From positions 4,898,001 to 4,962,000 of the forward strand of contig CM119384.1 in NCBI GenBank assembly GCA_051294905.1: a DNA stretch of 64,000 nt. Direction: 5' to 3'. The notes below the pieces were generated by a model. That model had not been told where the DNA came from. It saw only the letters and a program-made list of their open reading frames with translations, and searched no databases. The DNA comes from Botryllus schlosseri (lineage: Eukaryota). Both the position numbers and the translations under genes were made by a program. Of this stretch, positions 7,001 to 55,400 are shown in pieces. Every line of letters begins with the position of its first letter. Position 1 is the first letter of the stretch.

Positions 7001-10000
7001 CCGCCGCAAATCATTCTATTACAAATCTTTAAACTAATATCGCGTACTGTAAAATGATTGGATGGTCATCATATTTACGTAAGACACATAAATCCGACTG
7101 TGTGGTCTCGCCATACGTTATTATCACCAAATTATGAAGTCTTTCAGATTAGGTCCGATAATGCCAACACACTTCAAATCGTGGCTATCGTGGTCGGGAT
7201 GAAAATTACGGGTATCCCGATAACGATAAGTATCCATCACTTAGACCTGGACAACTAGAAAGATTTCAGTTTTTCTAAATTAGATTAGAATTATCATTAC
7301 AGTGATACATTTTTTGCCAAATTCGTCTAGAATTATAGCTACACGTTTTCCTTTTCAAATATTATTAGAATTAGAATTACTGAATTCCTGAAGATTTGGA
7401 AATCAGAGAGAAAAAACATCAAATCAGCGTCATTAGCATGATAATGGCAAATGTACGTACAGCAAGCTTGGCTCATTTTGCACCATGTAGTTCTCCTGTA
7501 GCATTGTCAGAAAACCCAAAATTGGATTAGAATTAAAATTAGGTCAAACATGGCCTACTAGTGGTAGGCCATGGGTCAAATAAACATTCCACAAATTAGA
7601 TTAGAATTAGATTACCGACATTTCGCTCCAATTAGTGAAATTAGGCAACTAGAATGATCTAGTAACTATTTGTTTATATTTTTGGTATTTCTGATACATT
7701 TAGGCCTAGCAGAAGCCAAATTATAGGACAATTCCAGCCGAGGCTCAATCAATAGCATAGTCAACGGTCATCCCATACCCCGTAAACATAATAATGCATA
7801 TGCGGACAGTGGTTACAGGCCAATTTGCATGGTACATCACTACACAAACACCGATATGGAAATAAATCAGATGATTTGTGTGCGGGATGGAATATGTCAC
7901 ACGCGTTATTCACATCTGTATAACTATTAACCAAGCCACTCTATCAGGCACCATCCCACAGAAATAATTGAGAAACTGAGGCGGAAAAGTTGAAATTCAA
8001 CAAGGTTTCTAGGTTTATCGCATCAAAAAACGTTTACGAACGTGGATATTCGTGTTACAAGTAGTATAATTGGAATAAAGATAGACTTAGGTATACATCA
8101 CGCGCATAACATAGATATCTTGTAATCTCATACGCCTTATAAAACGCAAGCGCGCGCATGATGATACAGCCTGTGTAGGCGCACACACCGACACAACATG
8201 CAAATAAATATTGCATGCCTTGTTTTTCTCAGTCGCGCGGCGACACGCCATTGTTTACCCGACGCGGAAAAACAACTTTGTGGGACGATATGCAAACTTG
8301 AGCAAGTCTCGACAACAAAAAAATGAAACGTCACCTCCGCATCGCGCGACTTCCTTTCCTAGATTTTGCATCGTGCTAGAAAGGCATAATTTGGCGCGAG
8401 GCTTTTCGGATAATACATTGTGTACAAGTCCGTATCGTACATTTCTGAGTTGCCTGTATACATCTGTGTTGCCAATGGCAGTACCAACTTAATTACTCAT
8501 AAAAGTATAAGTACTTTGTTACAGACCACATCTGTAACTAACTGTCTTGCCAATGACGCCTGTCATCAGAATGTGGGGCCAGTGTATCTAAAAAGCCTGC
8601 AGCAAAAGTCGCAATCTGCCAATCTGGTAAAACCAAAACAAAGGTATGGGGCTTGCTATGATTTTGATTACAGCAGTCCAAACACTATGCAGAAAAAACA
8701 CACCAGACATATTAGTGCACCAGCGTGAACTAGACGTGCACAAACTATTAATATAGTTAGTTGACGGTCAGCTACTATTTTTGGTGTAGTTTTACTTCTA
8801 GTTGCGGATTTTGAAAAGTGAATAGTTCCAGTTCTAGTTCTAGTTGCGGATTTTGAAGTGTGTAGTTCTAGTTCTATAGTTGCGGATTTTGAAAAGTGCA
8901 TAGTTCTAGTTTTAGTTCTAGTTGAGGATTTTGAAAAGTGAATAGTTTCAGTTCTAGTTGCGGATTTTGAAAATTGAATGGTTCCAGTTCGAGCTGTGAG
9001 TTTTAAAAAAATGAGTACAATTCCAGTTCTAGTTGCTAGTTTTGAAAAGTGAGTAGTTCTAGTTCTAGTTGCGGATTTTGAAATCCAGTAGGTTGTGAAC
9101 TCAACTGGCGAAATACCAATTCCCTCCAGTACCCATGACGTTTGAAATTAACCAAACAATCTATACTTCTACGGTAGGTTGTGATCTTTTCGCCTCTATT
9201 GATATTTTTGTTCAAGTGCCGCATCCCCGCGTTAATTAGCTGTATTTGAACCCGCATTCTTAAGAGTCGCGGCGATTTAATTCGACTTTACAAACCGTCA
9301 TTGTCGCTCGGGTAATTGCCCGAATCACAAAACCGTTAAGATCATAACTTGAAAACAATAACATTTCTGCCAAGCGCGGCACTTGATCGCAACGAAAGTC
9401 TTTTGAAGGCGGCCCGCGTAATAAAGGTAGACAAGCATTCATTGTCGCGACCGTTGCTAGGTTTAGAAAAATAATCATGCGCGCTAATTGCTTTCATCTT
9501 TCGTGAAAACACAACAAGCGGAAAACTAGCCTCCTTTGGGCGGCCTGTATTTTTTGGATGCCTCTCGAAAATGTAACTTCGAATAGCAGTTCTCAGCTAT
9601 TTGCTGAAGATTACCCTGACGAGTGTCAGCTAAAAATATTCGGGTTCATTTCAATAGTATTCAATTGCACATTGACGTTCTGTATCTGCGAGAAGCTCTT
9701 TATATAGCAAGAACAGTTTCTAAATTCAAATTCAAGTTTGCAAAGCATGTACCGTTTGCACTGATGCCTGTCGATAGTGATCAACAATACTGAGTACAAG
9801 ACGTTATGGAATGCAAATTCACTATAGCAGGCTCAATGCGATAAAACATCGACAGCGACAAGGAACTTATGAGAGCAAACAATTTCAGCGTGGCGCCACC
9901 CTGTGGTTACACAGCAGACTTGGTCTCAACGAGATGCAGGAAATCTAATTCTAATCTGGTTTCTGATTTTCCCGAAAATACTACTGGGGAACTGTATACC

Positions 10001-13000
10001 ATAGTGCGAAACGAGCCAAGCCTTGTCTGCAGGCTTTTCCCATTGTCGTGCTTATGAATATGAATTCCGATTTGATATGAACTTGAGTTTTGTTGTATGT
10101 CTTTCTAATTAGGAAGTTCATTCCATTGTGAAATGTGAGTTCAGTACTTCTAATTCCAATCTAATCTGGAAAAACTGTGTACTTGTGTAGCTATAAATAT
10201 AATTTTAATCCAGTTTGGAAAAGCTGAAATTTCCAACTCTGGAACGCAGCTTCCAAAGCGTGGCGACCCCACGGTATAATATCCGCCCTAACAGAAGAAG
10301 CTCACGAAATTATCATTTCCGACACAGTCGTAACCTACAAGCGTTACGAGCAGCGAGTCCTATTCGAACGAGAGAAGAAAACAACAAATATCTCCCGAGA
10401 CAAGATGTGCGCGCGATTTGAACAAGTCAACAAATCTCATTCAAGGCCTAAAGTACTTCCTCTTGTAATGATCGTGTAGTGGGTCCTTTCTTTCGCGGGA
10501 AATCGACGAAAAAAGATTTTACGCACTAATTCAAAATATTATCAAAGCCACGTTAATGCTCGCGGGCGCGAATCGAATTAGCCAAGACGCATCACCGACA
10601 TAGGCGTTTTATCGTTGAAGGATGAACCCACAGTAATCGCGTTAGCAACAGTACCTAACACGCAGCGCAAGAATGTTTGGAAACAGCTGATACGACCGTA
10701 AGACGCATATCCTCCAACACGCATTTTTTTGCTCGTTTACTCCGATCGGCGTGCTTTAAAGCGGTTTCAAATTGGCTATTAATAGCGTGTTGGGCGTAAA
10801 CAATGCGGTCGACGTCTATCCGGGTGAAACGGGTCCAAGCGAAAAAAACGACATTACAGCGGTCAGTCCGGTTATCAAAACGCCAAAAAAACGCGGTAAC
10901 ACGAGACCGGCTTTCGGTGTCTCATGCTGGGCGCGAACCGGTGAACTTTACAGTCAAGATTATGCATCAACACAAACACATCGACAAAAGACAGGCAGCT
11001 TCATTTGCTAAACACTCTTCCTGACTGACAAATGCCGAGACAAAGTCACGTTTGTTGATTTTAACACACGGTTCAACTCATCTCATTACGTCACGCTCCA
11101 AATCGCGCGCGCCCAGCCAGCTTTTTCAGCCCGAGATATTACCAGCAAAAAGGCGCACCCCACTAAAAGGGCGGGCTCAACAAGCGGATATAACAGAGCG
11201 TCATAATTCATAGCCCTGTATGATATCCAATTACGTGCGATATATGTTATGTTAACATTCAAAGTCATAAGTGGCGAGATACGGTAAACAAATTACGGTT
11301 GATACTGCTAGCTCTGCTAGCTGAGCATCGGTAGCATCCGGTTACTGTATTTATTATTGTTATTATATTTACATTGCTGACGTTACAGATACTGGCTGGG
11401 TCAGTTACGACACATATGATGAATCTTCTGTAAGCAACCAGCGTATTACCGTGGTGATAATACTTGTGCGAACAAAAAGCATATATCGGCTTTTATAACA
11501 AAAGGACCGGGCGGAAGTACACTCACAACTCATATTATATCCCAGAAAGCTATATTGTGACGTCATCTTTTATTTCACTAATTTGGAAACAACTGTGCAG
11601 CTCTAATTCTAATCTTCATCTAATCTGGGAAAAAATAAACTGTTTGAACAGCTTCTTGGAGGTACAGAACTTCAGTATACAATTGAATAGTGTCAGCCGA
11701 AAATATTCGGGTTTATTTCAATATGAATATCCTATTCGAAAAAACCTGTGTATTATAATTCTAATTTTCATCTAATCTGGCAAAAACTGTGTAGCGATAA
11801 TTCTAATTCTAGAATAATTTGGAAAAAAAGAGTGTAGCTTCAATTCTAATTCTAATTCAAATCTAATTTGTAAAATGTTCCTAGGCTCTAATTTTAATTC
11901 GAATCTAATTTCTGGCCATCCTGCAAATGCTACAGGAGAAATTCGTAGTACGAAACGAGCCAAGTTTGCTGAACAGACATTTGACATTCACGTGCTCGCG
12001 GGAATGAACTCTCTGATTTATACGAACTGATCCTGATTCAATTCCAAGTTTCCGCGGATTCAGCAATTCTAATTTGCGAGCAAGTGAAAAGTAATTACTC
12101 CAGGCGTATCTTTTCACAAAATACCGAATACTGTAACCGCTTGAGTACGCAACATAGTCAAGCGAAACCTACTTGATTACTTCGCAAACGTAAAAATACT
12201 TCCTTACACACAGCCTCATAAACAGGACTTAGCCCATTGAACACGATCTTAAAACGGGTTCTATACCAATACCGAGAAAACCATCACCGAGAATGGACAC
12301 CACCGAGAATGGACATTACCGAGAATGGCCAATGTCAAGAATATAGCTTACTGGGACTTTACGTTGTCGAGAAATTTATACCTGAGCATCGATACCGAAT
12401 GTGGCGACGCCGTGATGCGCACACACGACCTGTGCATATGCATAACATGCCTGCATTGCATATATTGCATTCTCGGTAATGCCCATTCTCGGTGGTGTCC
12501 ATTCTCGGTAATGTCCATTTTCGGTAATGTCCATTCTCGGTGGTGTCCATTCTCGGTAATGGCATTCTCGGTAATGGTTTTCTCGGTATTGACCGGACAC
12601 CCTTAAAACTACCGCTAACGAGCGCTCTAGCTACTATCAAAAATTTCACTCACCAAAGGATGCGACATGAGCGACAGTTCCGATTTCGGGAATGCCGGCG
12701 CGGACCGTTCCGATCGGGAGTTGTCGTCCGCGTCGTGGTTCCTGCCGGACTCCCGGTCCTGATGACTGTGAATCTCTTTCGCCTGGTCTTCCATACTGTG
12801 CAAGTGTGTCATCATGGAGCTTAATCGCTCCCGCTCTTGATTCAACTGTGAAGAGCAATTCAAGATATTGAACTTGGTATCGTGATAACATGGACGATCT
12901 GGTTGGCGATAGACAGCTACAAAATATTCAGTTTTTTCCAAGTTGGACTACAATTAGAATTATAGCTACACAGTGTTTCCAAATTATATAAGAATTACTG

Positions 13001-16000
13001 AATTCTCAAAAAATCATAAATTGAATTATATTCTGAGCTAAAAGGAAATACAAGAGAAATCATGTTCAGTTCATATCAATCCAAACTTCATTCGCATATG
13101 AGCACGAGAACGACAAATGTCTGTACAGCAAGCTTGGCTCTTTCCGCACTATTCAGTTCTAATGTAGCATTTTCGGGTACATCGGAAATTACATTAGAAC
13201 TAAAATTAGAGCATAGAAACGTTTCGAAAATTAGATTAGAATTATCGGCATTTTGCTCTACAACTACAGACAACTAGAATTATCTGGACCAAATTTACTT
13301 TCTGAAACTACTTACACTTTTCGTTTTCTGCTTTCCAAGTTCGCAACTATTATACTTGTAATTGACGGTGACGTCATATTTTTGGATACGATTGTTGATG
13401 TACAATGTTCTTTTCAATTATCTACTACTTGCTGACGATTACCCCTGACGTAAGCCGAAAATATTCAGATTTATTCCAATATCAATATATTATTTACTTG
13501 TTATTGAGTGAAAATTTACAGCGTTATACTTCTACTTGGGTAGCAATTCTGGCTGCTGTGAGTCAGCCTGTAGCATCCGTCGTTTATTACGAGTTTTATG
13601 CGCCGCGCGCAAACCGCCCCCTCGCCCACCACACGAATACACACCGATTTTGATACAGTGCCTTTGTCAAAATGAGTGATCATAACATAACGCCAGTGTA
13701 AATTTGCACGCGCTTGTCACCATGGCCATGTTGTCACTTATGTGGCCCGCAAACCGACGGCCCCAACCCACAGAAAAGGCGGAAAGTCGGCGACCCTGAT
13801 GCCACATGAGATAATCTACATTCAGATCTATTTCCATCATACCAAAGGAAACATCGCCAGAAAGTAACAAAGGCAGACAGTTCCCTCGCAACAGAATGCA
13901 GTTAAACGGTGACTTTTATGCGTAAATAAAAACGTTCAATTTCTACAATACACAGTAAGCGTCGTAGCAAGGGGGGCAAAAGGCACCTAAGCACACTTCA
14001 AATTTTATTGGGCCTTGTGACGTAATGCATATTAACCACCTCACATAAGATTTGAATGTTGAAGACATTGATGAAATATTTTCAGCCTGGCTACAACTGG
14101 GCCCACGGGCCCAAGTCCGTAACTATCTAGTTCGCTATAGAGTTGTTGATACCTAAATCCCGCTCGTTGGTTATCAGGTAGCAGTAGAAGGAAAGTCTCA
14201 GATTTCTACTCGAGTAGAAGTAAAAGTACAGATTTTAAACTGATTTCTACCAACTACGAGCAAAAGTAGCAGACTTGTACAAACTACTAAATTTTCAAAA
14301 TGCGACACTAGAACTAGAACCACTCATTTTTCAAAATCCGCAACTAGAACTACTCGCTTTTCCTATTTCAAAATCCGCAACTAGAACTGGAACTAGAACT
14401 ACTCACTTTTCAAAATCTGCAACTAGAACTAGAACTACTCACTTCTCAAAATCCGCAACTAGAACTAGAACTACACACTTCTAGAACTTCTAAAAAAAAA
14501 CATTAGTTAGTTAGTTGTCCGTCAACAATCTAAACGGGTAGTATGTGCAAGTCTGAAAAATAGCCATTTCAAACTATGTATTCTAGGACTATTTTGCCTA
14601 AAAAACTGTACACTGTTAATGAGAAGTAGTTAAAATTCATTACCAATTAGCAGTGCAAATCTATGTAAGTGATTGAAGAAAGTCGGTGTACTTCCGGTGT
14701 TAGTCAACAGAGTACCAGGCGCAATAAGTGTAGCGTAAGAAAGAGTCGAGTTCGAAAAAATGCGCTGTCAAGTGCACAAGGACCACACGCCAAGACTACA
14801 ACGTAGAAAGCCTGTTCGCATGGACATGGTACACATATTTGCATCCTAGAATTCATGGAAAACTATAGAAAAATCCCGGACAAGGTTGCTGCAGCATTGC
14901 CCATGATAGGATGACGAAATATGTTAGCTATGTACTTTCAAATGATATTAGAAACTGACACTTTATGAAACCCATTGAATCGGTGTGAAGTGTCATCGCT
15001 TAATGTACGCCATTTTCCCCGTACTAATGACACTCCGTGATACACAAAGCAGTTTGCTTTTGTAAATAACCAGATGTATAAGACCGGGACCCATTGTTGT
15101 CGAGAAGTGGTCCGGGATCAAGATCTCTAAGTACCACTGCGACACACAATGCGCCCGTGTTGATTCTGAATAAACAACCGAGGCGCAACGATTATCAATA
15201 TCGCGGGGGTCGAACAATAAGACAGGACATTACAATATCGCCATCTCGCCAAAAGTTAAACAGTCATCAAACAGCGCGTCACAAAAAGAAGTAATTTTCG
15301 CATGACATATCGCCGGGCGGAATTGTCGCTAAATAATCAATTGCGAGCGCTTTTGGGCGTGTGCGATCGATCGTTGCGCGGAAAACAGTTTGAAAAATAC
15401 GTTCGGCCTTTGTGATCGCACAGATGTACACACGATTTCGCCTTTTCAGAGATTTTCGACACAAAGGAAGCCACCTAGCCCTATATTTGTTTGTGAATTA
15501 TAAATATTTGACGGCGGATGCATCAAAGACAGACGGGCGAATGCTCGGAGGAAATTGAATGCTTTTTCCCGCTTCGTAATGTAGACAAGACAAAAATGAT
15601 TACTCTCTGTGTAGCCAACATCAGCAATAATAACGATTCGGGACTTCATACGCAGAAACAAGGCGGGCAAGGCGCGAAAAACGATGCCGCGCGCAGCGCG
15701 CAATGTTGCGAATTGCGATTTCACCGAACTAGCCGTGAAAGGGCCAGGTGTCGCGGCTGATAACCGGCATCCAAAATAAACAGTCAATAAAAGCAATCGT
15801 TGGTGTGAGTGGGGTATCGCGGATAAACAACGGCGAAATTCAAAAACCCTGGATATCAGACAATGATTTGTATTTATCCTCCGTAAAGGAAGGCTGTCTG
15901 ATCAAATTTCATCGAACGCATATTTTTGACGGCTTACACGATCGGTTGGTCAGCAGCAGACTTGAACAACTTCATAATTCTTGTTGCTAATTAGACTAAT

Positions 16001-19000
16001 TAGAGCGAATTGCCCGTAATGTAATTCTAATCTAATTTGTCAAATGTTTCTATGCTCTAATTATGCTTCTAATCTAATTTCAGGTTTTCCTGAAAATACT
16101 ACATGAAAACTGTATAGTGCGAAACGAGCATAGCTTGATGCTATTGCAATCATGTGTCCAAGTCCATGTCTATATCATACAAGCACTGGCGTAGCAGCAT
16201 GTGGTGCCTTGACGGCTATTTCGGAGTGGTTCCATCGCCATGTTAACAAATTAATTCGTGTTGTCGGAATCAGCGCGACAATAGCTTTCGATTGAGACCT
16301 GTTTGATTAAATTTTAGCTCACGGGGCGCCAGCTATAGGACTACCAATTACGCTTTTTTTGGCCGGCTGTGTACACTGTGCCGAGCGAGGTAGTGTAATG
16401 GTGATGCGTCCGGCTTTATTGATCGGTAGGTCGTGGGTTCGATCCCTGGCCGGGTCAGACCAAAGACTCGAAAACTGGTATCCGCGGTTATCCCGCTTGG
16501 TGCTCAGCAATCACGGAAGAGAAAAAACGGGGGTGCAGACTAGATGACGTTACTATGAAGTCCGTATCGCATCTCCGTCGTGAAAGCATGTGATGGTGCA
16601 GGCGAAAAATAATACCATCTCCCTCTCTCTCTCACTGTGCAGCCTAATTTTGCCGCCCTCTAGGAGCCTGCCGCCCCTGGCGCAGAGCCAGAACCGCCAA
16701 GTGGCTGCTACGCCACTGCATACAAGTCACACGATCTGGCAACCGAAATCGACTCTGTATCATTCTCGAAACGCCGCATTACGAAGAAAAAACAGTCTGG
16801 GATAGGTTTCTAGATCTATAGACAGACCATGTGATTTTTACCCATTCCAATAGCTTGATTCGAAATCGCTAATCTTGTTAAGGCACTAATAAACCTAATT
16901 ATAAAACGCCAAAGCAAAACGGTTGCTAAAAACTATACCCATTCATATCTCAACACGTAATTATAATGATAAGGTCACATCGCTACTTGGCGGTCAACCG
17001 ATTCATAAAGTCAAGAGAAGCGCAATTTGATCGCATTATTACCATTAAACAAACCGCGCGGCTTCACACAAACCAAGCGCGATCCCAAGAAGTAGCTGCA
17101 TATCAAAAAGGCATCATTATTTTACGATGAGGCACCGGCCCGAGCCGCAAATATAAACCAAAAGCGCCAAGGGTACCAAATCTGTTTACGAATCGACTTC
17201 TATCCGAAAATAAGGCGAATCTATAATCCCTCAAAGCGCTAACAAAATTACATTAACCCTCGCCAGGAAAAAGAGTTGATTCAAACTAGCGCGACACAAA
17301 CCCGTCTCGAGAGAGTTAACATAAAACGACGCACTCATCCTCATTAAAACCTCGCGCGAAAATAACTTGTTTATGATTATTTAGTTATTTGTTTCCATTC
17401 CAGGCATGCTATTTCGCGCGGCGGGCGCGCATAGGATATTATCATCCGCAGGATATTGCCTGTAATAGCGCAGCTGACAGATGTCTACCAGAGCCGGGCG
17501 CATAACTTTCGGATAAGCGAAGCCCCGGGAATCCATTACAGGCGCGTAGCAACAACACCGCTATCGGGCCGCGTTGGATAAAACAACCGTCAACAGATAA
17601 TGTACGCGTAGAGTCCGGATGACATGTTGCAATAATACACAAACATACGTTCTGACGCGCGTCAATCAAAATGCGAGAAATCCCGAGGGCTAGAGCTTCC
17701 GAAGAATTCCACACAAAAATTTCGACGACACGTATCAAAGCATCCGCAACCACAGTACAAGATGCATAATTACGACAGCATCGACTGATGATATTTGACA
17801 TTAACCACGATCCTGCGTAGTTTGATGCCACCTATACATCCAGAGGTATACCATACATATTGAAATGAACCCGAATATTTTCGGCTGACACTCGTCAGGG
17901 GTAATCGTCTGCAACTTGTACAGAATTGGAAAGAACATTGCATTTCCAGAAGTGGTCAAAAACGAAGTACTTTTAGTTTTTCGGAGTACTCAAGTAGGTT
18001 TTCTATACTTACACTATTACTCACCAGAGTAGTTATGACTTTACAATACTCCTACTTAACAGAATCGCTCGCTACTCCTACTTCGACTGTCTTGGAGTAC
18101 CCAAGTAGATTTTACTTCTACGTGATAACATGATGATATCGAAGGTACTCCGACCACAGTAAAGAAGTATAATTCCAAAACGATCGACTATTAACATTTG
18201 ACATTAACCACAGTCCTGCGTGATTTTGACCATACAGTAAAAGGAGCATAATTCCATAATTAGCGACCACTAATATTTCACATTAACCACAGCCCTGCAC
18301 ACATTAATTGCACCTGTATCGTTAGACTAACGAACCGTGCCGTAAATGAGAACGCGGCCCCATATAATTTTCGAAAATGCCATCGCCTGGCAACGTATAA
18401 TTTCGAAATTCATTAGCCCCTTTCCACACAATTAAACACGCAGCCGGATAATTGAGGGCGAAAATATAATCTCTCTGACGGATATCATAATCTCCCAGGC
18501 GTTGGTGGTAAAATGCCGCGCCCCGCGCGCATTTATGCGGGGGCCCGCCGCGTGGCATCGCGGTCACATCCCCGTGCGGTCAGAAATTTTCCCGAGGCGC
18601 GCGCATGAAATTAGTCATATTATTTTATCTCCGCGAGGGATTCTCTCACCCCGTTTGAACCCCGCTGTTTGGTTTCGGATTTTGTTGATTATTGGCAGTA
18701 TACAAAGTGAAGCGGTACAACAACTCTGCGCGCCGACACGTTGTAATTGGATTGCGATCAGCGCATCGCCATTTTGAGTCATCAACGGTTATTTTTAGTC
18801 GACAATCAGGTGGCTTCGGCGGGAGATATTTCTCTAACGCGTTTCAACGCGATTACGAAATTCAACAAACAACACGACATAAATGAATCCTCTGTCAAGA
18901 CCGGGACAACTACATAATTGTAGTGGTCTAATTAATCTAATTACACGAAATGCCGGTAATCAAATTCGAATCTATTTCATGCTGAAATTTTTATTCTAAT

Positions 19001-31000: not shown

Positions 31001-34000
31001 AGACATAAACGTAAGTCGATATAATATTTTACAATTCACGATGTACCCGTATTTTCCAGAAATATGAAGCCTGGCTGCCGAATCGATGCACTTTAAGACA
31101 AAGTCACATCTGTGTTCCAACTAGGATTTAGTCTGTAACATTTCATACCACATCAATATTCACTATGGTGACGAATACATTTAATTGAACGCAGGATTTT
31201 GAGTCACGCTACCAAATTATTGCCGAGTACAGGGGTGTCATTATTGTATTCCCGGTTATTTATTTGTTAGATAGTTACTAATCCAAAATTACCCCTTTTC
31301 CTTCCACGATAAAAGCAGCATAGAGTTGAAATTACATTACATTCCCGTACTGCGAGCGAGATAGGATATAAGGAAATTGCTTGTTTGTTTTCGCCGCTAT
31401 TGAGTAACTAAACAAGATCTGTCCACTTGACAAGTCGGGGTCATTAAATAAAGATAAGACGGGCGATTGAGCGTGAAACTCTACATTCTGACAAGGGTCA
31501 TCCTGTTATCTGCGATAAGAACAAGGGCAATTTCCCACCGAAACGCCTATTGCCGCGACGCAGCGTTTGGCAGTGTTTACTCAGACGCACAGCTTCGGCG
31601 CCCGTAGGAAACAAGATGCAGATGTGAGATAGAGGACAAACAAACAGTCCGCTCTGGGATACAGAAGGCATCTGCCTTGCTTACTCATACCAACATAAAT
31701 AAATACACATCGCCCGTAATCGCGTTACTCAAGCGGCGGGGTTGTCTGTGACTAGGGCGGCCCCTCAGGTGTGTCTATGCTTGAAATACGACTTGATCAT
31801 TGTCAGACGTCTGGGTGTCGCGCGACAAGTATCGCTTTTCACGTTGAAAAAATGCGTTAGATCTAGACATGGCAACTAGATAATTTTAGTGGTCTAATTA
31901 GACTTATTAGAGCCAAAGTCTAATCAAATTTGTGAATTGTAATATTTTACGTCATATTTTATGATACGATGGCTGATATACGATGCTCTTTCCACTTCTC
32001 TACTAGTTGCTGACGATTACCCCTGACGAGTGTCAGCCGAAAATATTCGGGTTCATTCCAATATGAATATATATAACAGAAGTTCTGTGCTTCCGAAAGC
32101 CTATTCAAATGTGAATATACAATTCAGTTCATTTTAGCTCTAATTTGCTGTAAATGGCGCAGGACATACGTATATAGTGCGAAACGAGTCAAGCTCACGC
32201 ACGGACATTTGCTATTATCATGCTCGAGAGAATTAAGCATGATTTTACATGAATTGAATTTGATTCAAGGACCGAGTTTTCGCGAGTTCAGTAATTCTAA
32301 TTTGAAAAAATGTATAGTCATAGTTCTAATTTTAATCTAATCGGGAAAAAAGTGTGTGACCAGAATTCTAATTCTAGTCTAATTTGGATGCAAACTGTGC
32401 AGTTATAATTTTGATTCTAATTTAATGTGAAGAAGCTGAAACTGTTCTAGTTGTCCAAGTGCGGTTTGGTTGTTAGATAATCGCATATCGTTAACGATCG
32501 GTAATCAATCTAACCGTACTTCCCACGCAGTGAGAGCTCACAAAATATGATTCTCATTCATTAAAACAGCATTGCGGCAAACACGGATTAATACTTGAAA
32601 CCACATCGCGTATATAGTCCGCTACCAGCTCTTGGAAATGTTTGGAGTATGCGTCAAAGGTTGTAACAAAATATTGTCATACTAAAACAGTGCGTGCAAA
32701 TTTACAGTGCTCACAACGTCAGCACACACTTCAAGGCCCGTAACCTAAATACCGTGTCGCTTAAGGTTATTCGAATGATCTCGCTGTTACCATAAATACG
32801 TTACGAGTCGCGATAAAGAAATTAGACTACGAAATCCCACAACCTCTGGCGCGAATATTGTGATGGACTGTGAAATTAAATTGTTACCTGCTGCGCTGCG
32901 ATTGCTTGTTGTTGTTGCATAAAGGCTTGAAGCTGACCCGGCGAAGGAACTTGCTGGGAAAGTAACTGTTGAATCTGTACCACAGAAACACAATCTGTGC
33001 ATGAATATTTAAACAGTTCCATTGCATGTATGGTATACACCATTGAAAATTGAAGATTCGTTTGTATAACTCACGAGAAATAAACGTACCTGTTGTGAGT
33101 TTAAAAGCGATGTGGGTGAAAACGGAAGGCCGGAGCCTTGGGCGCCAGAGGCGGCGGCTGCTGCTGCGACCATGGCTGCTGCCAATGGGTTTTCAGACGC
33201 CGACTCCTTGACGCTGTCTCCCCTGCTACTGTTTGGGGAATCTGCAGTAGGCAATCCCGCCACGATTGTTGATACCGGGTTCGTGCTTTTGTCAAACTGC
33301 TTCAGATCTGACTGGCTATGCTGCTGTAGTAATGATAGCATTGCCTGCCAAAAGAGAATGACTTCAACAAAATATAAATATCTGAGCCTCTATCGAAACA
33401 CTATTCCAAGTCCTTCCTATCTTTACATTTTATCGCAATCTTGCGGTGTCAAGAACCGATGAAAGGATGAATAAACTGAACTGAACTAGTAAATTATTAT
33501 ACTTGGCCTAAGTTACCAGGAACACGGCACTTCGAATATGATTTATATCAGAGCATGGCCATGATCAGAGCTGCATATTACTGGAGCTATGCAATCAAAA
33601 TATGACTTTAGTTCGTAGCTTTATCATGCACCCCTCACTCGCGCTATAATCCACCTATAAATGGGCGGCGCATACATTCTTTTTCAACTTGAAATCAGTA
33701 CAATTTTACAGCACTCGAACCTTCCGATATCACTGTGAGTGTGAGAAGTCACTTTTGTGACGCTATTAATCAATGACATAGCCGGCCTCATCTCGTTCGT
33801 TTCAGAGATTATACGAATATATTCAACAGCAATACATGCGCTCAATCACTTTGGCAGGGCTAATTTATCATTTAGAGCTTGCATGCTCGTCTCATTGCTT
33901 GTAAACGTCCGTCACAAGTAAAACAAACCGTGATCGCCTCGTCAAGAGTTTGGCATTTCCTATGTAATATTGACACTTTAAAACCGTTGCGTCATGGCGC

Positions 34001-36444: not shown

Positions 36445-36538
36445 TACTACACATCCACAGATCCTCTCGACATTACCGGGGCTACTATCGGCAGAGGTGT
36501 CGCAGGCTATGCTTAGAAACAGTACGCCGAAAACTCTT
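36241..36538 (-). CDS. FOXP: Probable first coding exon of FoxP (ATG at 36444; [10 protein letters not shown]...RLSAHK)
   Basis: ttgcag acceptor at 36539-40, open frame, phase-0 donor AAG|GTAAAT at 36241 matching the phase-0 next exon. No homology motif, so the assignment is positional. Confidence 0.6.
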
Positions 36539-37800: not shown

Positions 37801-39031
37801 CACCCACACGACGCCAATCCCGTGAAAATGACTTTATTTCGAGAGCGCTGACCACATCCTAGGACCTAGAATACTTTCGATGCTATCTATATTCGCAAGG
37901 ACATAGTAGAACCTGTCTGGCATTGTTTTTTTTTTTCTCTTTTACGACAATAATCTCGCTGTACACGCACGCACTGGTGCGTTCAAGAGTCGTATAAACC
38001 CCATATAAAACTAATACCGACAAAGGGCTTGAACTGTCAAAGATATAGGACGTGACGTACTCCGCTCATGCATATTACACACCGTTACATACGCAACATA
38101 ACAAATTAGGCGCGGTAATTCGTTTGAAAGACGGTACTAATTCTGTTGAACAAGGGGAATTAATTACGCATCGGAGCCGGTTCCTACCCGTAAGCTCTTC
38201 GGTACATACTCGAGCGAGTTCGTGATTTTAAGGCCTGCGCGCGTATTTACTGTTATGGCCCAATTACTATAAACACAGAATCATGGTTGGAGAGCTATTA
38301 CTAAACAATTTTAATCGCGCGGTTTCGCGTGTAATTCGAAGGTTTGGACAGATTGGGACTGCACACTGCACAATGTGTGTGCACAGTGAACCCAGAAATT
38401 GGGTAGTTATCGGGACCAACATGACAAGAAATCAGTTCTATTTCAAAATTATAAGGTTACAATAAAAATTGCTAACGTGTCAACTGTCAATCCCGACTTA
38501 TCAAACAGAGGCATTCAGACTCGCAAGTTAATTTATCGGAAAATGGACTGGAAAATACATTTTGCAGGCATGAGAAAGATATAATAAAGGTTCTCTTGTG
38601 CCTAAATTTTGAATGGTGGGCATTGGGCAATGAAGGTATGGAACCGGGACAATATCTCACTGTTGGAAATTCTCGCCATTTACAATTATGGTTTCGGCTA
38701 CGTCAGTGTCAACAGTTGTTTTAGATTGCATACCAATGGATCATGTCACACGCACTCGCTCATTACTCCACTCTAAATATTAGAAACGTATCTTGCGATT
38801 GTACTTATGGAAATTTAAGTTGTTGTGACCCATAACGGACGATGCTTCCATTCGGTCATCAATTCGCGTTGTAAATATATCTATCACCGACATAGACTAA
38901 TAAGATTCTTTGAAGCTCCATTCCAATGATGATGAATACTATATTGGAGCGATAGCGCTTAGCCGGTATGTAGCTTATTATCTCTCGGCACTCTGGTGCG
39001 TCTTGTGGCATTTATCAAGCGTAGTCCATAC

Positions 39032-39060
39032 CATGGCCTACTAGTTTTTAGTAGGCCATG
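39032..39060. mobile_element. P-element-like excision footprint (29 bp), TSD TCCATAC
   Basis: TCCATAC-CATGGCCTACTAGTTTTTAGTAGGCCATG-TCCATAC. Confidence 0.8.
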
Positions 39061-40534
39061 TCCATACCGAAAATTGTCAAAGAAAGGTTTCGGAATTGCA
39101 GCTCTCTCATTTCGACTAAGCAGCCTTATGACAGTCAATTTGGAATCGTTTCTCAATGCGAGCTGATACATATGACCGCTTTGCTTCGTTATCTGCTACG
39201 GTAGCGTCGGGTTGCAACGGCTATCTCTGCATATTGCGCGACTATCATCTGACTCCACTATGTACTTAATGAACCCTGCCTGAGTGGGAATGCTAGTTTT
39301 GTAGCGGAACGTTATCAGTAGATCAGCTCTGATTTGAATTCTACTATAATTCGTTATTAGAAATGGAATTGTGTTGTAGATTTTCGAATATCAGAACTAG
39401 CTCACTAACGAGGCATTACAACTTGTGTCATGGATAACGTTTTGGATAACTAAGGTCCCTGATATCCATCAAATTGATACAGCGCTTTAAAATCTACACC
39501 TGAGCTACTATGAAGAGTCCGTATGAATATTAATATCGGTATAGTTTGCTCTACGAATTTCACATTATAGCTTTTCATATCATTTTCGCCCAATATTCTG
39601 ATTCCCTACATGGTGGCGTCATCAATCTCACGCGACATAGACTACACGTGTTGCAAACGCTGTATCAGACAACTTAACCAGCTTCGGCTGACGCGATACG
39701 GACTCATATGATTCGGCAAGTTTTGCAGCTTTAAACATTCACGTTTTGCATAGCACCGAGTCATCGAAGTCGCAGCGTACAAACAACGTTGCGATTCACA
39801 ATGCATACAAGGAAGAACGTTTACAAATTGGGAAATATGATAGCCGTTCACGGGTTGAAAAACAATGACATGTCAGCCATCGTCTTGACATCGACGAATT
39901 CCCATATTAGCGGAAGCTATTATAATCAAATGATGGATTGCGGCAGAACTTCCCGGGACATTCGCATCGCGAAAATATCGAGGCTGCGCTCAAAAACCGG
40001 TCGTGTATGAGTTTTGACAAGGGCTAATTTATTGTTCCCGATGTTTCACGTTTTTTTTTTTGAGCTAACGTTAGCGGTGGCGTATTACGTCATGTATTAA
40101 GCGGTGTGAGGTATAATCAAGTCACATAGCTTGCGCACCGATTATAAACATTGAATAGTACATTGATGGGTTGCATATTCGCGCACCGTGACTAATTAGT
40201 CCTAGTTGGGGTTAAGACTTGAAGATGCAACTGTGCATTGCTTTGCTGATCCTCGCAGTAGGACATAATATCAGTAGATTTCATTTGCTGGAGAGCTGAT
40301 GAAAATTTACTCGGACTACGCTATTGTTGACAAATACTGCGACAATTGAATAGTATATTCAGATTGAAATAGACTCGCATATTTTCGGCTGCCACTCGTC
40401 AAGGGGTCATCGTCAGCAACTAGTAGAGAATCGGAAAGAACGTAGCATGTCAACAATCGTATCGCCAAAAATACTGGTACACATAAAAAACAAGATTCCG
40501 TAATTCAGGGGGTTGGGATAAACACGGCGGTGAC

Positions 40535-40908
40535 TAGGATTGCATTTAAAACAAAGATGTTTTAAACAAATGCCGTTTAAAAAAAATAATGTTTATTTTA
40601 AATTCGTATAATTGTGTAAATACTTTCCAAAAATATGCTGTATGAGCCTATGGACGATTACCACCCGATATAGCCAACGTATACCATATGGGATTTTTGA
40701 AACCCTCAAAATAGTCGGTTTTACAACTATGGTACGTAGATATTTCGTCAACGGAGCTATATTTGCCCTATATTTTCAATTGTCAAAGCCAATCCATTAT
40801 GACGTCACAATTGAACATTCGTGACGTCATGGCTTTAAAAAAATGTTTTAAAAAAGGGCCTTGTTTTGAACATGCTTGTTTTAAATTGATTTTTTAAATG
40901 CAACCCTA
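40535..40908. mobile_element. hAT-type MITE, TSD GCGGTGAC
   Basis: TIR TAGGATTGCATTTAAAA / TTTTAAATGCAACCCTA; perfect 8-bp TSD. Confidence 0.88.
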
Positions 40909-49518: not shown

Positions 49519-49841
49519 GATGTTGGGTGTTTATAAAGCTCCGTGGTGCGCACCGGCATAAAGCTGATAAACAATGTTATAGGTGGGACATGAACGTGAC
49601 TTAACCATGTGCAATTACGCTCCCTGTATTTTCGAACTCATCAAGTCATCATCCTCCACCAGTTCTAACGCTAACTCTGATCATGTGGGCGGAGAGCAGT
49701 AGCTATATATTAATATATGTAACGACCAATATTATTGACATAATTCATTCAAATAATTTAACGACCAGATGCATATATGAACCAGATTCATATAGCAAGC
49801 CCCCCCCCCCTCCTCCAGAAGTTGCATCGATTACTCTATAG

Positions 49842-51027
49842 CAGGGGTTCTCAACCCGCGGCCCGCAGACGCTTTTTCTGTGGCCCGCGAGATCTTTCAA
49901 TATGATCGCAATTACTACCGGCCCAGTATTGTCGCATACGGTATCAATTTAGCTACTAAAGCTCTCTTATCGCTCCGTCTCTGTTTCGTTTGATTTATTC
50001 TCATTCTTCAATGTTTTCTGGTTTATTGATATATGGTTGAGTTTGGATTCTTATTGTTCTGAATAGGTCTTCGGACAGCTCCATCTCGAGTTACACATAT
50101 CACCTGATCTTAGCAAAAAGCGTTGCTAGCTAGGTCTTAGGCTAAGCAATCCATATTTTGAGGCATTGTTGAGATTGCCGGCGACGTTAAAAACGCATGG
50201 TTCAAAATTGCTTGATATATCGCTAATCCCATGAAATCTTAGACAAAGGTGTTTCTCCAACAAAACGTTACTATACTGTGCGAATCTCCGCTGTTTCCGG
50301 AATTTAGCAGCAAGTAAAACTTCCCCTAACAAATTTCGAAGCTGCAGTTGTCTGATTCAGCTGTGACAAGAAGATTAACAGCAATGTCAGTTAATCTTTT
50401 GTTGAATGTTTTGCCCCGTTGACTACTTTAACCTAGCATTGGACGAAATCTACGGACATTGCAACGCTAATTGTATTGGGTTATTCTATCAGAGTGGATA
50501 TATTTGTACAAGTAATGCTGGCTGGGCAAACGTGGGGAGAGGGGACTAGCAAACAACATCAACTTATCAAAGCTGACTTCTGTACTTATTGGTGTCGGGC
50601 ATCAGCCATGGAAGGAAAGGAGAATGGTTTATTGGTTTGCTCAGAAATTACCCCGGACATGAGTCTTCTTCTCATATCACTGAGAGCCCAAAGTTACCGT
50701 AGTTTTATACTTGCTCGCTCACGCATTGAAACAGAGAGTTCAGTTCTCTGGTGCAAGGGTTTGAAGGTGCACATACCGATTTGGGAACGAATGGAATGCA
50801 CGCTTCATGAAGGGATTTGCTTGTTCCGTCGGAAGATGACACAATCTCACTAGAAACAGCAACTGAAAGCTTACGAACGCTGTCCATTATGCTGTAGAAT
50901 GCATACAAACTATTAGCCTAGATATAATAGTATACTCCAAAAATATACGGTAATAATGTTCTGCGGCCCGCAGCGCTTTTTGCTGTTAAAATGCGGCCCG
51001 TTACGCAAGGAAAGTTGAGAACCCCTG
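49842..51027. mobile_element. hAT-Charlie-type internally deleted element, TSD CTCTATAG
   Basis: TIR CAGGGGTTCTCAAC / GTTGAGAACCCCTG; perfect 8-bp TSD; no intact transposase ORF. Confidence 0.92.
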
Positions 51028-52326
51028 CTCTATAGTGTGGGAGGAGGCTGTAAACATGTGCTTTCGGTCCCAGTTACACAACACACAGCCACACACTCCT
51101 GAACCGGATCGTGAGTCGTGACCAGCACCTCTGGTCTCTCATCAAAGCTTTGCTAGTGTGACGTCATAACTCATTTTGAAATTCACTAGTGGGCGCTTAA
51201 GAGTGTCCGGAATTGGGGTTTCTGAAATATGGTAACCCTAAGTTAGAATAACCATGTCGTACTTTTTATAACACGATTAAAGACTGTTAGGCCCCCGATG
51301 GTCTAAAAGAGTGTTATCACCGGACAGCCGGGCTGAGTACTCGAATCTGAATCGATCCTTGCTACCAACAAATAATAATGACTCTCTCTCTCTCTTTCGT
51401 CAATGAATAGGGGCAGAGCGACAAGCGCCTGCTGACCGCGCGGCCCGGGTTCGATTCCGCGTCCTGGCTCCTCTTACCCCCCGTCGCTGTACTTACGGCG
51501 ACAGTAGAAGTCTAAAAAAAGATCCGATGAAAGAGCGCACTCACAAGGAATTGAAAGAGCCGCGGGATAGAGATCAACATAAAAAAAAACTGACATCAGG
51601 CACTAGGTCGATATGGATGTCAGTTCAGGAGACCGCAAATGGTCGTTCGGTAGCATCCTTCTGTCTGTTCATTGCACATTGCGTTCGTCTTGATCAGATC
51701 AAAATACAATCTGACGATTGCTACCAATCCAAATTAATAACATCAAAGTACAGTTTCTATAGTGGTAGCCTTGAAAACTCGATTGGTCGTATCCTGACAT
51801 ACGAAACATGTAGGCTAGTTCGAAGTCGCGGACGATAGTGGAAATATCTGTGAAGTGCAATGTAGGGTGGTAGGCCCTACCTACAGGCATAGTCAAAACA
51901 AATACCCGATTATCGGTAATGTGATGTAGAGCAGGCACGGGACCTACGATACCTAGCATAGAGGGTACATATTTGAACTTTACACGCCTTTCATAGTCAT
52001 TCAGAGTCGAATCGATTTTGTCCATCCCTATAAATTACTTGACAGTCCGCCCATCACACCTCCCGAGAAATCTATCTATTGCTTTCACAGTATTCACACA
52101 CGTTGAACTACAGCTGTACAACAACTTCAGTAGAGCAAGACAACTCAAACGATGAATTTCAGAAAATAATTTAATAGACCACTTCGATTAAATATGTAAT
52201 CTCCAACACTGCAGCTGCGACATCAATCGGCAGAATAGATTTCTGTCCCTAGTGCGCATTTCCACACGCGCGGCCTTTATCGGGGACTTCGCTTGGATGA
52301 GCCAGTATTATGCTCCACAATTCGGC

Positions 52327-52463
52327 TCAATCCTGTTTATTTGTCTCGCTGTTGAAAAGCGGACGATCGCACATTGGACAAGTGTCCTGAATGAAAATCC
52401 ACTTCCGCAAGCAGTGAGTGTGGAACATATGCCTGCATCGCGTTTTCCTTATCTCGCCGTGTT
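52327..52463 (-). CDS. RNF139: RNF139 last exon, second half of RING-H2 and stop (frame not in ORF track)
   Basis: attttag acceptor; CRHMFHTHCLRKWIFIQDTCPMC; TGA at 52329-52327. Confidence 0.95.
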
Positions 52464-55400
52464 CTAAAATACACAAGTACGGTCAGCGGTGAAGTTATTT
52501 CTACTTTTTTCAATACTCAAGTAGCTTATGTCTACTTCCACTACTTACTAATGCTGCCATACGTCAAACTTTGTATATTATTGTCAAGTAGAAAGTATTT
52601 GGACCACTTGTCAGAGCTAGAACGTGACCAGTGTCCGCCATTAGAGTAAAGATATCTGCAATTATCACGACGCCACAATACGATAGTGGGGAGTTGGAAA
52701 ATCTGCCATTGCTAGACTGAAAATTTCGATATGCTTCTTATAGCTTACAGGCTTACATTTTCATGTTCAAGAATAGCAACGGCTGTAAATTTGGTAAAAA
52801 GTTCTGGAAACAAACACCTTTGAAAAGAACTCTAGGACGGAAGAATATACCGAAACATTTTTATAAACAGCGAAGGGTCACAAGACACATCTCCACTATG
52901 AATACTAGCCTTGACAATGAAGTACCAATCAATATACGTTCAATAGTTTAGTAGTAACTTAATATCTTCGTGGACTCAAGCCGAAGTCATACCCATCCGT
53001 CCAGGTTCTACACCACAGTATAAAGACTGCGTGGAGTATGTGGATCTGTGAGCAAAGAGTGGGAATGGGTAAAACAATGACTGCAATGCCTATTTTATAC
53101 CTAGAAACTATGCTGTAGGATAGGATGGCCGAGATTAACATATGATAGACTTCTACTCACCCATGGCCTACTAAAAACATGGCCATGACTCACCTAAGAT
53201 AAAATCTTGATAGCATATGCTACACACGTCCCTGTCTTGTTCTGGGATGTCATCCACATCCACAACAGCAAGACTCGATATCTTTGAGTTGACAAATCTT
53301 CTGTTATTGAAAGTCTTAATTCCCTCTCGAAACGTTCTGGAAAACATGATTAACTTCTGTATCTTCTGTATCAAAAGTACGACAATCTTGGACGTTCATT
53401 GAGTTCAAATTGCTCGAGTCAAATTCATCCAAGTTCAGTGGCATTGAGATGAAAAGGTGGGTTGCTAGAATGGTGCATCATGTTTTTTTTTCTTACATAA
53501 GAGCAGCACGAATAATTTTTGAGAGGATCTAATTTCAAATAATTTATGACGATGTATCTCTTATACAAGCATCCAATATTGAAAGATGTATGAACTCACC
53601 GGTAGATATTTACGTAGGCATGCATCGTCATCATGACAGCCCGCAGCCAGTTGCTCGATTCAAACATCAGTATGTAAGCCCCATTGATGAACATCACCAG
53701 GCCGCATATGAACTCGATCACGTGACTTATGGAACGTATCCAGAAGACGTAATCGTCCAAATTGATGATACCGTTGGCGTGGTACCTCGAATCCATAACA
53801 TAAAGTGCATACACCATCAACGTTGATAAAACCTATAATTACATGAGAAAATATTAAAGATTTCCAATCGGATATCAGAAATATGAAGCGGACATCTGAA
53901 GCAAGAAGATTTCACGGACTCATTACTAGCACCAGGCACAACGATGTGAATACTCGAATCCGAATCAAGTGGTCGGAGACAATTTTTTCCAATATAGAGT
54001 TATATTATACCTTAGATACCTTCTTGAAACCAAGCAAGTATATCACGGTATCTAAAACACAGCATGAAGCTACAAAAAGACGTGGATATGACATTTCTCA
54101 CGTAGGGTTACCATATTCTGAGATCGGGGAAAGAGGGCACTTTTTACAAATCACAAAACTTATACTAGCGAGGTCATTACGCCAACAGGACTCCCCCGAA
54201 GACCCACTTTAATGTAGTTTTCTAGTCATTCTTGCCGTCAAAATCTGGTATGAGCGTCATTTACAGCGTTTTTTTAGTTGTGCCTGTACTATCACCTGGC
54301 TGTCAGTGCTATAAAGCAGGACGAAGTGTAAAAAAAGAGGATATTTGGGCGTCCTCGGATGGCATTTTCGATTTCTTCAAAAAGGAGGACAATACCTCTT
54401 CGGGGAGGACGTATGCTATGCCTACACTTCTGTGAGGTTGTGATCAACCCTGCAGCATTCTGACCGAGCGCAATGAAATAGGTACCGTACTAAATTATGT
54501 CTAATGTCTTGAATAACTGGCATAATTGCGTCACGATTGCAAAAAATGAAACATATTTGAACTCAAGTTGACTAGTCCTACTCATTACAAGAGCAAAAAT
54601 CACAACAGTAATAGAAAATGCATAGCCTAATAACCAGAGCTTTATTGGCGTCAGACGACATAGCACAGTTTTGGAGTCATTATTATTGATCAGCTAAAAT
54701 CAGAGGCGGTCAGTAACGAAGTATTATACTTTTTCAGAGTAGGCCTACTCAAGTAGGTAATACTATTCACTTAAGCGGTTATGATATTTGACTACTTTTA
54801 GACTTCTTCTTTACAGTAGGCCTATATTGTGCAAAACTAGGCAATACTTGCTTTTAGTCGTACTTGAGTTGAAATTTATGCGTCAATTCTACTTGAGTAC
54901 TAAGAATAACTACTTGACCATATCCGGTCAAAAAACTCCATCTTAATCTCTCACCTTGACCACCAACTCCAGATTAAACGCAGTGAGAGCGATCATCCAT
55001 GTAGACAGACGCTTTGTAGTTAGCAGCCAATAGCACATCCCACTTGGTAACGCCAAAAGAATCAAACATATCAACAACGGGTTCACGTGCTTCCGTAACG
55101 GTATATGACTTTGCGGACTGATAGTCATCAGGACAGGGTGAACGATATCCAGACAAAAGTGAAGAATTGCGGACAGCAACAAAAATGAATTCCTGTACAA
55201 CCGCACGATTCGTTTCCATGGCGGTAGCACACTCAAACGTGTTTGTATCGCTAGAAGGCAAAACAATATGGAGGACATCATTCCCAAAGCCTCTCCTTGA
55301 GCGAGATCATTTCCTCCTATAAACTCGTGTAGCACAGTCCCGGCATAAAATCCAATCACAGACATCGCAGCTCCCACGGAAAACGAGGACAATAATGATT

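What the first reader, a model, noticed from the sequence alone, without database searches (positions are those of the whole stretch)
7542..53194. Five P-element-like excision footprints in 46 kb reveal an unseen cut-and-paste family
Seen: five palindromes starting CATGGCC and ending GGCCATG (10, 10, 25, 26, 29 bp), each between a different perfect 7-bp duplication (GGTCAAA, TTGTCAC, ATCAGAG, TCCATAC, ACTCACC). Two copies retain the same 16 nt of one end (CATGGCCTACTAAAAA); two show the other end as CATGGCCTACTAG. Established: P-element transposase leaves 17-nt overhangs, so repair keeps about 16 nt or less of each end between the TSDs; P termini begin CAT; TSDs are 7-8 bp. Inference: scars of a P/THAP9-type transposon with a ~12-bp TIR. 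No full element is in the window. This density would extrapolate to very many scars genome-wide.
Basis: partly seen in the sequence, partly recalled or inferred. Interest (0 to 1): 0.88.

Follow-up and report, generated by a model that had tools for sequence, protein, structure and literature searches.

The report
Transposon excision scars in sea-squirt DNA
Five tiny palindromes in this sea-squirt (ascidian) region are most likely the scars left when a P-element-like jumping gene cut itself out and the break was rejoined; this is an ordinary process, but the scars are unusually easy to read.

Summary
Five inserts that start CATGG and end CCATG (25, 10, 10, 29 and 26 bp) each sit between a different, exact 7-bp direct repeat. 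No shuffled sequence gave even one.

The window comes from a styelid-like ascidian, judged from RNF139 exon identities.

The best reading is excision footprints of a cut-and-paste family with a 12-bp shared terminus, CATGGCCTACTA.
- The retained arms are 5-16 nt here. In relatives and marine metagenome contigs with the same terminus and a 7-bp duplication they reach 17-18 nt.
- In about 110 kb scanned, no such insert is 37-5000 bp long.
- The junctions fall into the classes known from Drosophila P-element breaks. One class keeps both long tails, with or without filler. The other is a microhomology product: pairing of GGCC at positions 4-7 of both tails gives exactly CATGGCCATG.

That assignment is inferred. 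I could reach no full element, no transposase and no empty or filled allele.

First-stage notes on other parts of this genome report 17+17 and 18+18 palindromes with 7-bp duplications, so the scan has met this before.

Verdict: a new member of a known kind, of moderate interest.

The parts
7542..7580 (.). Footprint 1. A 7-bp duplication (GGTCAAA) flanks a 25-bp insert at 7549-7573: the 13-nt arm CATGGCCTACTAG, 2 nt of filler (TG), then a 10-nt arm (GTAGGCCATG).
13714..13737 (.). Footprint 2. A 7-bp duplication (TTGTCAC) flanks the 10-bp insert CATGGCCATG at 13721-13730. This is the product expected from GGCC microhomology joining of two identical tails.
33547..33570 (.). Footprint 3. A 7-bp duplication (ATCAGAG) flanks the same 10-bp insert, CATGGCCATG, at 33554-33563.
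39025..39067 (.). Footprint 4. A 7-bp duplication (TCCATAC) flanks a 29-bp insert at 39032-39060: the 13-nt 'G' arm CATGGCCTACTAG joined directly to the 16-nt 'A' arm (TTTTTAGTAGGCCATG). It is not a perfect palindrome, as expected from two slightly different element ends.
53155..53194 (.). Footprint 5. A 7-bp duplication (ACTCACC) flanks a 26-bp insert at 53162-53187: the 16-nt 'A' arm, CAT, then a 7-nt arm (GGCCATG). On the minus strand the duplication reads GGTGAGT, which is the splice donor of the RNF139 exon ending at 53195.

Best explanation
These are excision footprints of a cut-and-paste DNA transposon family, most likely of the P superfamily, in an ascidian genome.

Proposed sequence of events:
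1. An element with the termini CATGGCCTACTA(G.../AAAA...) inserted at each site and duplicated 7 bp of target. The duplications are seen directly; the insertion event is inferred from them.
2. The transposase later cut the element out with a long staggered cut. This left about 17-18 nt of each element end as a 3' tail on the flanking DNA. The step is inferred from the cap on arm length and by analogy with Drosophila P transposase.
3. End joining then sealed the two tails in one of two ways. Either most of both tails were kept, with or without a few filler bases (25, 26 and 29 bp here; 34-36 bp in relatives). Or the self-complementary GGCC at positions 4-7 of both tails annealed and the flaps were trimmed, which gives exactly CATGGCCATG (10 bp, seen twice).

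Both copies of the target duplication survive, as expected. The scars have no function of their own.
For: 1. Exact 7-bp duplications, different at each site and never 8 bp in register, flank all five inserts. Chance expectation is about 0.

2. Each insert is made of prefixes of one terminus in inverted orientation, with variable end points and 0-3 filler bases. This is repair heterogeneity, not copies of one unit.

3. Enumerating the microhomologies shows that GGCC pairing yields exactly the recurrent 10-mer.

4. The same architecture occurs elsewhere.
- Three of four metagenome contigs that share the 12-nt terminus have 7-bp duplications, with inserts of 36, 34 and 29 bp.
- The RNF139 contig of a related ascidian carries two more scars, of 36 and 22 bp.
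- One further scar, CATATG between 7-bp duplications, lies in L004.

5. In about 110 kb, every CAT...ATG insert with a 7-bp duplication is 6-36 bp long. None is 37-5000 bp.

6. Experimental Drosophila P{wa} junctions have the same anatomy: duplication, up to 17 nt of CATGATGAAATAACATA, filler or microhomology, up to 17 nt of the other end, duplication. They also include a long-microhomology class (PMC2895639). The 17-nt stagger is described as atypical and as distinguishing P from other characterised transposases (PMC7776569; PMC10983969).

7. The P-superfamily families 1360 and Galileo make 7-bp duplications, and P-like elements are known in the ascidian Ciona (PMC3698922). P and zebrafish Pdre2 termini start CATG and CATA.

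8. The pooled target sites show a weak palindromic motif, as is usual for a DDE transposase acting as a symmetric dimer (n=11).
Against: - I found no full-length or non-autonomous element with these termini in the window, the relatives' contigs or the public scans.
- No P-transposase or THAP9 ORF was found in the window.
- I could obtain no empty, filled or polymorphic allele, so the insertion-then-excision history is inferred.
- Two inserts are 18+18 nt, one more per side than the Drosophila 17-nt tail. The stagger may differ, or a base may have been added.
- The 4-bp CATG product, also predicted by microhomology, is not seen in the window.
- The Styela clava RNF139 locus (25 kb) carries no such scar.
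- Donor cleavage has not been characterised for several other eukaryotic superfamilies (my own knowledge), so a long stagger need not be unique to P.
Confidence: 0.72

Rival explanations
1. The scars are excision footprints, but of a cut-and-paste superfamily other than P whose donor cleavage has not been characterised. Examples are another family with 6-8-bp duplications such as Dada, or an undescribed superfamily that also makes long staggered cuts.
For: No transposase is linked to these termini. The superfamily rests only on the duplication length, the CATG terminus and the cap on arm length. Arms of 18 nt exceed the 17 nt of Drosophila P.
Against: The reviews read here describe the long stagger as distinguishing P from the other characterised cut-and-paste transposons (PMC7776569). 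From my own knowledge, hAT, Mutator and Transib leave hairpinned flanks with no element sequence, Tc1/mariner leave 2-3 nt, and piggyBac excises precisely. A 7-bp duplication with a CATG terminus matches P, 1360 and Galileo.
Confidence: 0.12
2. The 25-36-bp units are themselves tiny mobile elements made only of inverted repeats (micro-MITEs). A transposase acting in trans inserts them directly, and the 10-bp forms are decay or excision products of these units.
For: Only short forms are seen anywhere. Units of 17+17 and 18+18 nt recur in several contigs and, according to unchecked first-stage notes, elsewhere in this genome.
Against: Five copies show four different internal structures, with different deletion end points and fillers. 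A 10-bp unit has no room for transposase binding sites. Footprint 4 joins two different ends rather than forming a perfect palindrome. The 10-mer is fully explained by microhomology joining. Experimental P excision gives the same spectrum.
Confidence: 0.07
3. The inserts are internally deleted elements made by interrupted copying from the sister chromatid or homologue after excision (aborted synthesis-dependent strand annealing followed by end joining), rather than by direct joining of the cleaved tails.
For: In Drosophila most recovered repair products come from incomplete synthesis followed by end joining (PMC2895639).
Against: That route gives arms of any length, often well over 17 nt. Here no arm exceeds 18 nt and no insert of 37-5000 bp is seen in about 110 kb.
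Confidence: 0.07
4. The structures are chance matches or an artefact of sequencing or assembly, such as adapter remnants.
For: None.
Against: None of 200 shuffles gave any such structure. The same structure is present in independent short-read metagenome and Logan assemblies. No paper in the literature library gives the 12-mer as a transposon terminus; the few hits were unrelated, apparently primer sequences.
Confidence: 0.01

Closest known systems
Drosophila melanogaster P-element excision footprints (P{wa} end-joining junctions; Chan, Yu and McVey 2010, PMC2895639)
   Same: Both target duplications are kept. Up to about 17 nt of each inverted terminus is retained. Short fillers occur. There is a separate class joined at microhomology inside the tails. 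The terminus starts CATG.
   Different: The duplication here is 7 bp, not 8. The terminal sequence is different (CATGGCCTACTA...). The maximum arm is 17-18 nt. These are natural scars fixed in an ascidian assembly, not laboratory events. The transposase is unknown.
1360 (Hoppel/ProtoP) and Galileo, the P-superfamily families with 7-bp duplications (PMC3698922)
   Same: A 7-bp target site duplication.
   Different: Those are insect elements with known transposases. Here there is no sequence similarity and no full element to compare.
Chordate P-like elements: zebrafish Pdre2/THAP9 (PMC10983969) and Ciona P homologues (Kimbacher et al. 2009, cited in PMC7776569 and PMC3698922; not read)
   Same: Short inverted terminal repeats (13 bp in Pdre2, about 12 bp inferred here) that start CAT. 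P-like elements are present in tunicates.
   Different: Pdre2 makes 8-bp duplications and has a different terminus (CATACCTGTCAAC). The papers I read do not describe natural footprints for those elements.
Tc1/mariner excision footprints (TA, 2-3 nt of each end, TA)
   Same: The same principle: terminal nucleotides are left between the duplicated target after a staggered cut.
   Different: Only 2-3 nt per side and a TA duplication. Here it is up to 16-18 nt per side and 7 bp.

Membership tests
P superfamily of DNA transposons (P / 1360 / Galileo / THAP9-related) | Target site duplication of 7-8 bp | tested here: met
   Exactly 7 bp at all five sites, and at six more sites in L001, L003, L004 and L032. 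Reference values come from PMC3698922.
P superfamily of DNA transposons (P / 1360 / Galileo / THAP9-related) | Unusually long (17-nt) staggered donor cleavage, so that up to about 17 nt of each end stays at the donor site | tested here: inconclusive
   Arms are at most 16 nt in the window and at most 17-18 nt in relatives. No insert of 37-5000 bp occurs in about 110 kb. This is consistent with the feature, but it is indirect and the sample is small (11 scars). Cleavage was not measured.
P superfamily of DNA transposons (P / 1360 / Galileo / THAP9-related) | Autonomous copies encode a THAP-domain transposase with an RNase H-like fold and a GTP-binding insertion | not testable with these tools
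   No such ORF was found in the window. No query protein was available to search relatives. Unchecked first-stage notes report P-like remnants elsewhere in this genome.
P superfamily of DNA transposons (P / 1360 / Galileo / THAP9-related) | Terminal inverted repeats on full-length or non-autonomous copies, starting CA(T) | tested here: inconclusive
   The terminus CATGGCCTACTA is shared by both arms and starts CATG, like P. No full or MITE-sized copy was found in the sequence available.
Transposon excision footprint (end-joining scar) | Both copies of the duplication are kept and flank residual terminal nucleotides of both ends in inverted orientation | tested here: met
Transposon excision footprint (end-joining scar) | Junction heterogeneity: variable end points, filler bases and use of microhomology | tested here: met
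   Four structures occur in five copies, and GGCC microhomology gives the 10-mer.
Transposon excision footprint (end-joining scar) | An allelic or orthologous site that is filled by the element, or is empty | tested here: inconclusive
   Look-ups returned only the same contig. Introns do not align between the window and the relative. The orthologous splice donor in L032 has no insert, but the surrounding sequence is too diverged to count as an empty site.
MITE / independently mobile micro-element | Copies share one length and one internal sequence | tested here: not met
   Lengths are 10, 10, 25, 26 and 29 bp, with different junctions.

The most novel reading that the evidence does not exclude
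The 34-36-bp palindromes made only of the two terminal repeats, seen in relatives and noted elsewhere in this genome, are themselves mobilised by a P-like transposase. That would make them the smallest eukaryotic transposons known. The shorter forms in this window would be their own excision scars. This would explain why only short forms, and no long element, turn up in every sample.
Probability: 0.07. Interest if true: 0.8.

Novelty: new member of a known kind. Interest (0 to 1): 0.5.

Why it matters
If the P assignment holds, these scars are natural evidence from a chordate. They would show that the unusually long staggered cut, so far shown biochemically for Drosophila P transposase, is a conserved trait of the superfamily.

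Each scar keeps up to 17-18 nt of each end, so it can be recognised by a simple pattern search. This gives three things:
- a genome-wide record of past insertions and excisions of one family, which is rare for DNA transposons;
- a natural catalogue of end-joining outcomes (microhomology versus filler) in a tunicate;
- a way to find the still-unseen source element.

One scar sits exactly on the splice donor of an RNF139 exon. This shows that such events touch gene structure.

The process itself, excision followed by end joining, is well known.

Tried and rejected
**Identifying the species**
- An exact look-up and a homologue search with the 818-aa pogo-derived ORF found nothing.
- A literature search for the four SRA run numbers found nothing.

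**Public sequence scans**
- The paired-terminus pattern gave no hits in viral contigs or in prokaryotic genomes.
- The single 16-nt end gave 26 hits in viral contigs. None had a second end, so they are chance hits.
- A full-text search for the terminal sequence found nothing relevant to transposons; the few hits were in unrelated papers and look like primer sequences.

**Allele and orthologue comparison**
- Exact look-ups of two ORFs next to the scars in L032 returned only the same contig.
- Between the window and L032, blastn aligns exons only.
- The Styela clava RNF139 locus (25 kb) has no scar of this kind.

**Candidates set aside**
- A 4.4-kb candidate element at 34491-38938 has the duplication ATGAATA and ends matching at 9 of 12 positions. 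I rejected it as chance: the duplication is AT-rich and there is no ORF of 100 aa or more.
- L002 carries the paired terminus without a direct duplication, inside a longer hairpin. It is not a member.

**Failed prediction**
- The predicted 4-bp CATG scar was not found in the window.
Full report
**Observation**

CATGGCC occurs 15 times in the window against 4.9 expected, and 11 of these lie in five small structures. Reading the sequence and running an unbiased scan give the following:

| Footprint | Coordinates | 7-bp duplication | Insert |
|---|---|---|---|
| 1 | 7542-7580 | GGTCAAA | 25 bp |
| 2 | 13714-13737 | TTGTCAC | CATGGCCATG (10 bp) |
| 3 | 33547-33570 | ATCAGAG | CATGGCCATG (10 bp) |
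| 4 | 39025-39067 | TCCATAC | 29 bp |
| 5 | 53155-53194 | ACTCACC | 26 bp |

In the scan anchored on CATGG...CCATG, only a 7-bp duplication gave hits; 5, 6, 8 and 9 bp gave none. None of 200 shuffles produced a single case. Allowing one mismatch adds no further copies, and none of 20 shuffles gave any. The five are therefore all perfect and probably young.

A 16-nt arm, CATGGCCTACTAAAAA, occurs in footprints 4 and 5. A 13-nt arm, CATGGCCTACTAG, occurs in footprints 1 and 4. The two ends therefore share 12 nt and then differ.

**Context**

The window is animal DNA with 41% G+C and no Rfam match. It carries an RNF139/TRC8 gene on the minus strand. Its exons lie at about 57562-57425, 56891-56688, 55998-54952, 53832-53599, 53374-53195 and 52464-52324. 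It also carries a FoxP coiled-coil ORF and an 818-aa pogo-derived ORF.

The RNF139 exons are:
- 72-86% identical to unnamed relatives in Logan assemblies, apart from two poorly conserved short exons;
- 58-82% identical to Styela clava;
- 45-62% identical to Phallusia.

The organism is therefore a stolidobranch, styelid-like ascidian whose own reads are not in the collections.

**No source element in reach**

The window has no other copy of the 12-nt terminus beyond chance. It has no longer element with a 7-bp duplication and these ends. No ORF of 90 aa or more matched a P-transposase family; six ORFs of 90-95 aa that overlap longer ones were not scanned.

**The same thing elsewhere**

I scanned metagenome contigs for the two 12-nt termini facing each other with 0-30 nt between them. 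Four contigs came back.

Three have the same anatomy:
- L001: a 36-bp perfect 18+18 palindrome between GTCTAAT repeats;
- L003: 34 bp between GGTTGAT repeats, later copied inside a 188-bp tandem duplication;
- L004: 29 bp between CGTGGCC repeats.

The fourth, L002, has no direct duplication and lies in a longer hairpin, so I do not count it.

The 8.3-kb RNF139 contig of a related ascidian (L032) carries two more scars:
- 36 bp, with arms CATGGCCAACTAAATTAT and CATGGCGAACTAAAATAA, between GTGGTAC repeats;
- 22 bp (CATAGCCTTTACAAAGGCTATG) between GCAACAG repeats.

L004 also has CATATG between ATGTCAC repeats.

I pooled the window, these contigs and the Styela clava locus, about 110 kb in all. 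Every CAT...ATG insert with a 7-bp duplication is 6-36 bp long, and none is 37-5000 bp. One caveat applies: the three metagenome cases were found with a pattern that allowed inserts only up to 54 bp.

**Mechanism**

The anatomy matches experimentally recovered P-element donor-site junctions in Drosophila. Those have both 8-bp duplications, up to 17 nt of CATGATGAAATAACATA from each side, short fillers, and a separate class annealed at longer microhomology within the tails (PMC2895639). P transposase cuts with a 17-nt stagger, which is described as atypical and as distinguishing P from other characterised transposases (PMC7776569; PMC10983969).

In this family the first seven bases, CATGGCC, contain the self-complementary GGCC. 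I enumerated all microhomologies between two tails. GGCC pairing at positions 4-7 gives exactly CATGGCCATG. This explains why the 10-mer recurs at two independent sites and appears again inside footprint 5.

The other three footprints break down as follows:
- Footprint 4 is the 13-nt 'G' tail joined directly to the 16-nt 'A' tail.
- Footprint 1 is 13 nt, then TG, then 10 nt.
- Footprint 5 is 16 nt, then CAT, then 7 nt.

The other 4-nt microhomology, CATG, would give a 4-bp scar. None is present in the window.

The steps that are shown directly are the duplications, the arm composition and the junction structures. The steps that are inferred are the former presence of a long element, the length of the stagger and the repair pathway.

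**Superfamily**

A 7-bp duplication is the value for 1360 and Galileo within the P superfamily, and P itself makes 8 bp (PMC3698922). P and zebrafish Pdre2 termini start CATG and CATA, and Pdre2 has 13-bp terminal repeats. P-like elements are reported in the ascidian Ciona (Kimbacher et al. 2009, cited; the paper itself is not held).

The pooled target sites show a weak palindromic preference: T at -2, G1, T2, A6, C7 and A at +10. Five of 11 sites have GT at positions 1-2 or AC at positions 6-7, against 12% expected (p about 0.006). This motif was chosen after looking at the data and the sample is small.

Together these points make a P-like family the best candidate. Membership is not proven, because no transposase is linked to these ends.

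**Rivals**

- *A mobile micro-element.* This is disfavoured by the four different junction structures in five copies, by the 10-bp size and by the non-palindromic footprint 4.
- *An uncharacterised superfamily with a long stagger.* This cannot be excluded.
- *Chance or artefact.* This is excluded.

**Earlier notes of this scan**

These are unchecked leads. They report 17+17 and 18+18 palindromes with 7-bp duplications on other parts of the same genome. They also report P-like remnants, including a Galileo-like foldback with a 7-bp duplication. I could not read those sequences, so they are leads for locating the source element and not evidence.

**Side result**

Footprint 5 sits exactly on a splice donor of RNF139. 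The minus strand reads ...ATCTTAG|GTGAGT[26-bp insert]GGTGAGTAGAAG. The relative's orthologous exon ends ...AATGACG|GTATGG, with no insert. The original donor is intact. If the duplicated donor 33 nt downstream were used, it would add GESWPCF and then a TAG stop.

**Novelty**

I found no paper that describes natural P-type scars in a tunicate or gives this terminal sequence. The process is textbook. The family, its host and the clear natural record are new. I rate it a new member of a known kind, with moderate interest (0.5).

Noticed in passing
window 58059-58102: An 8-bp direct repeat (GGTAATCC) flanks a 28-bp near-palindrome, CAATGATATATCAT/ATCATATATCATTG (14+14 nt with one mismatch). It looks like a scar of a second family, with the 8-bp duplication of canonical P.
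   Followed up: partly
window 53155-53195: The duplication of footprint 5 is the RNF139 splice donor (GGTGAGT on the minus strand). The first donor is intact. The duplicated donor 33 nt downstream would add GESWPCF and then an in-frame TAG. The relative's exon (L032, ends at 4030) stops at the same codon position and has no insert.
   Followed up: partly
window 12551-12573: TCTCGGTA, ATGGCAT, TCTCGGTA: an 8-bp repeat around a 7-bp palindrome-like insert. It could be a scar of another family or a 15-bp tandem duplication.
   Followed up: no
window 19241-19513: A 273-bp foldback with 121-nt arms that are 84% complementary and a 31-nt loop.
   Followed up: no
window 16176-16726, 40527-40916, 49834-51035, 59018-60738 (with 59859-60313 nested): Five short elements with perfect 8-bp duplications and inverted terminal repeats starting CAG/CAC or TAGG (for example CAGGGGTTCTCAACC and CAGTGCTCTTCAACC). 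They look like hAT-like non-autonomous elements, one nested in another. A CATGGCC pair flanked by GGTTCTCAACC / GGTTGAGAACC in the Styela clava locus L034 (about 22850-23110) may be a related element.
   Followed up: no
L002 470-640: The same paired 12-nt terminus, 51 bp from end to end, sits at the centre of a hairpin of about 165 bp with no direct duplication. I cannot explain it. It could be a foldback that captured the ends.
   Followed up: partly
L003 1-306: A 34-bp scar with its 7-bp duplication was copied as part of a 188-bp tandem duplication rich in 11-bp GGGTTGTACGA repeats.
   Followed up: no
window 61451-63907 (minus strand): An 818-aa intact ORF with Tc5/pogo-type DNA-binding domains. 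It is not on record by exact look-up, and a word-based homologue search found nothing at E <= 0.001.
   Followed up: partly
11 pooled target sites (window, L001, L003, L004, L032): A weak palindromic target motif centred on the 7-bp duplication (T at -2, G1 T2 ... A6 C7, A at +10). The sample is small and the motif was chosen after looking at the data.
   Followed up: partly
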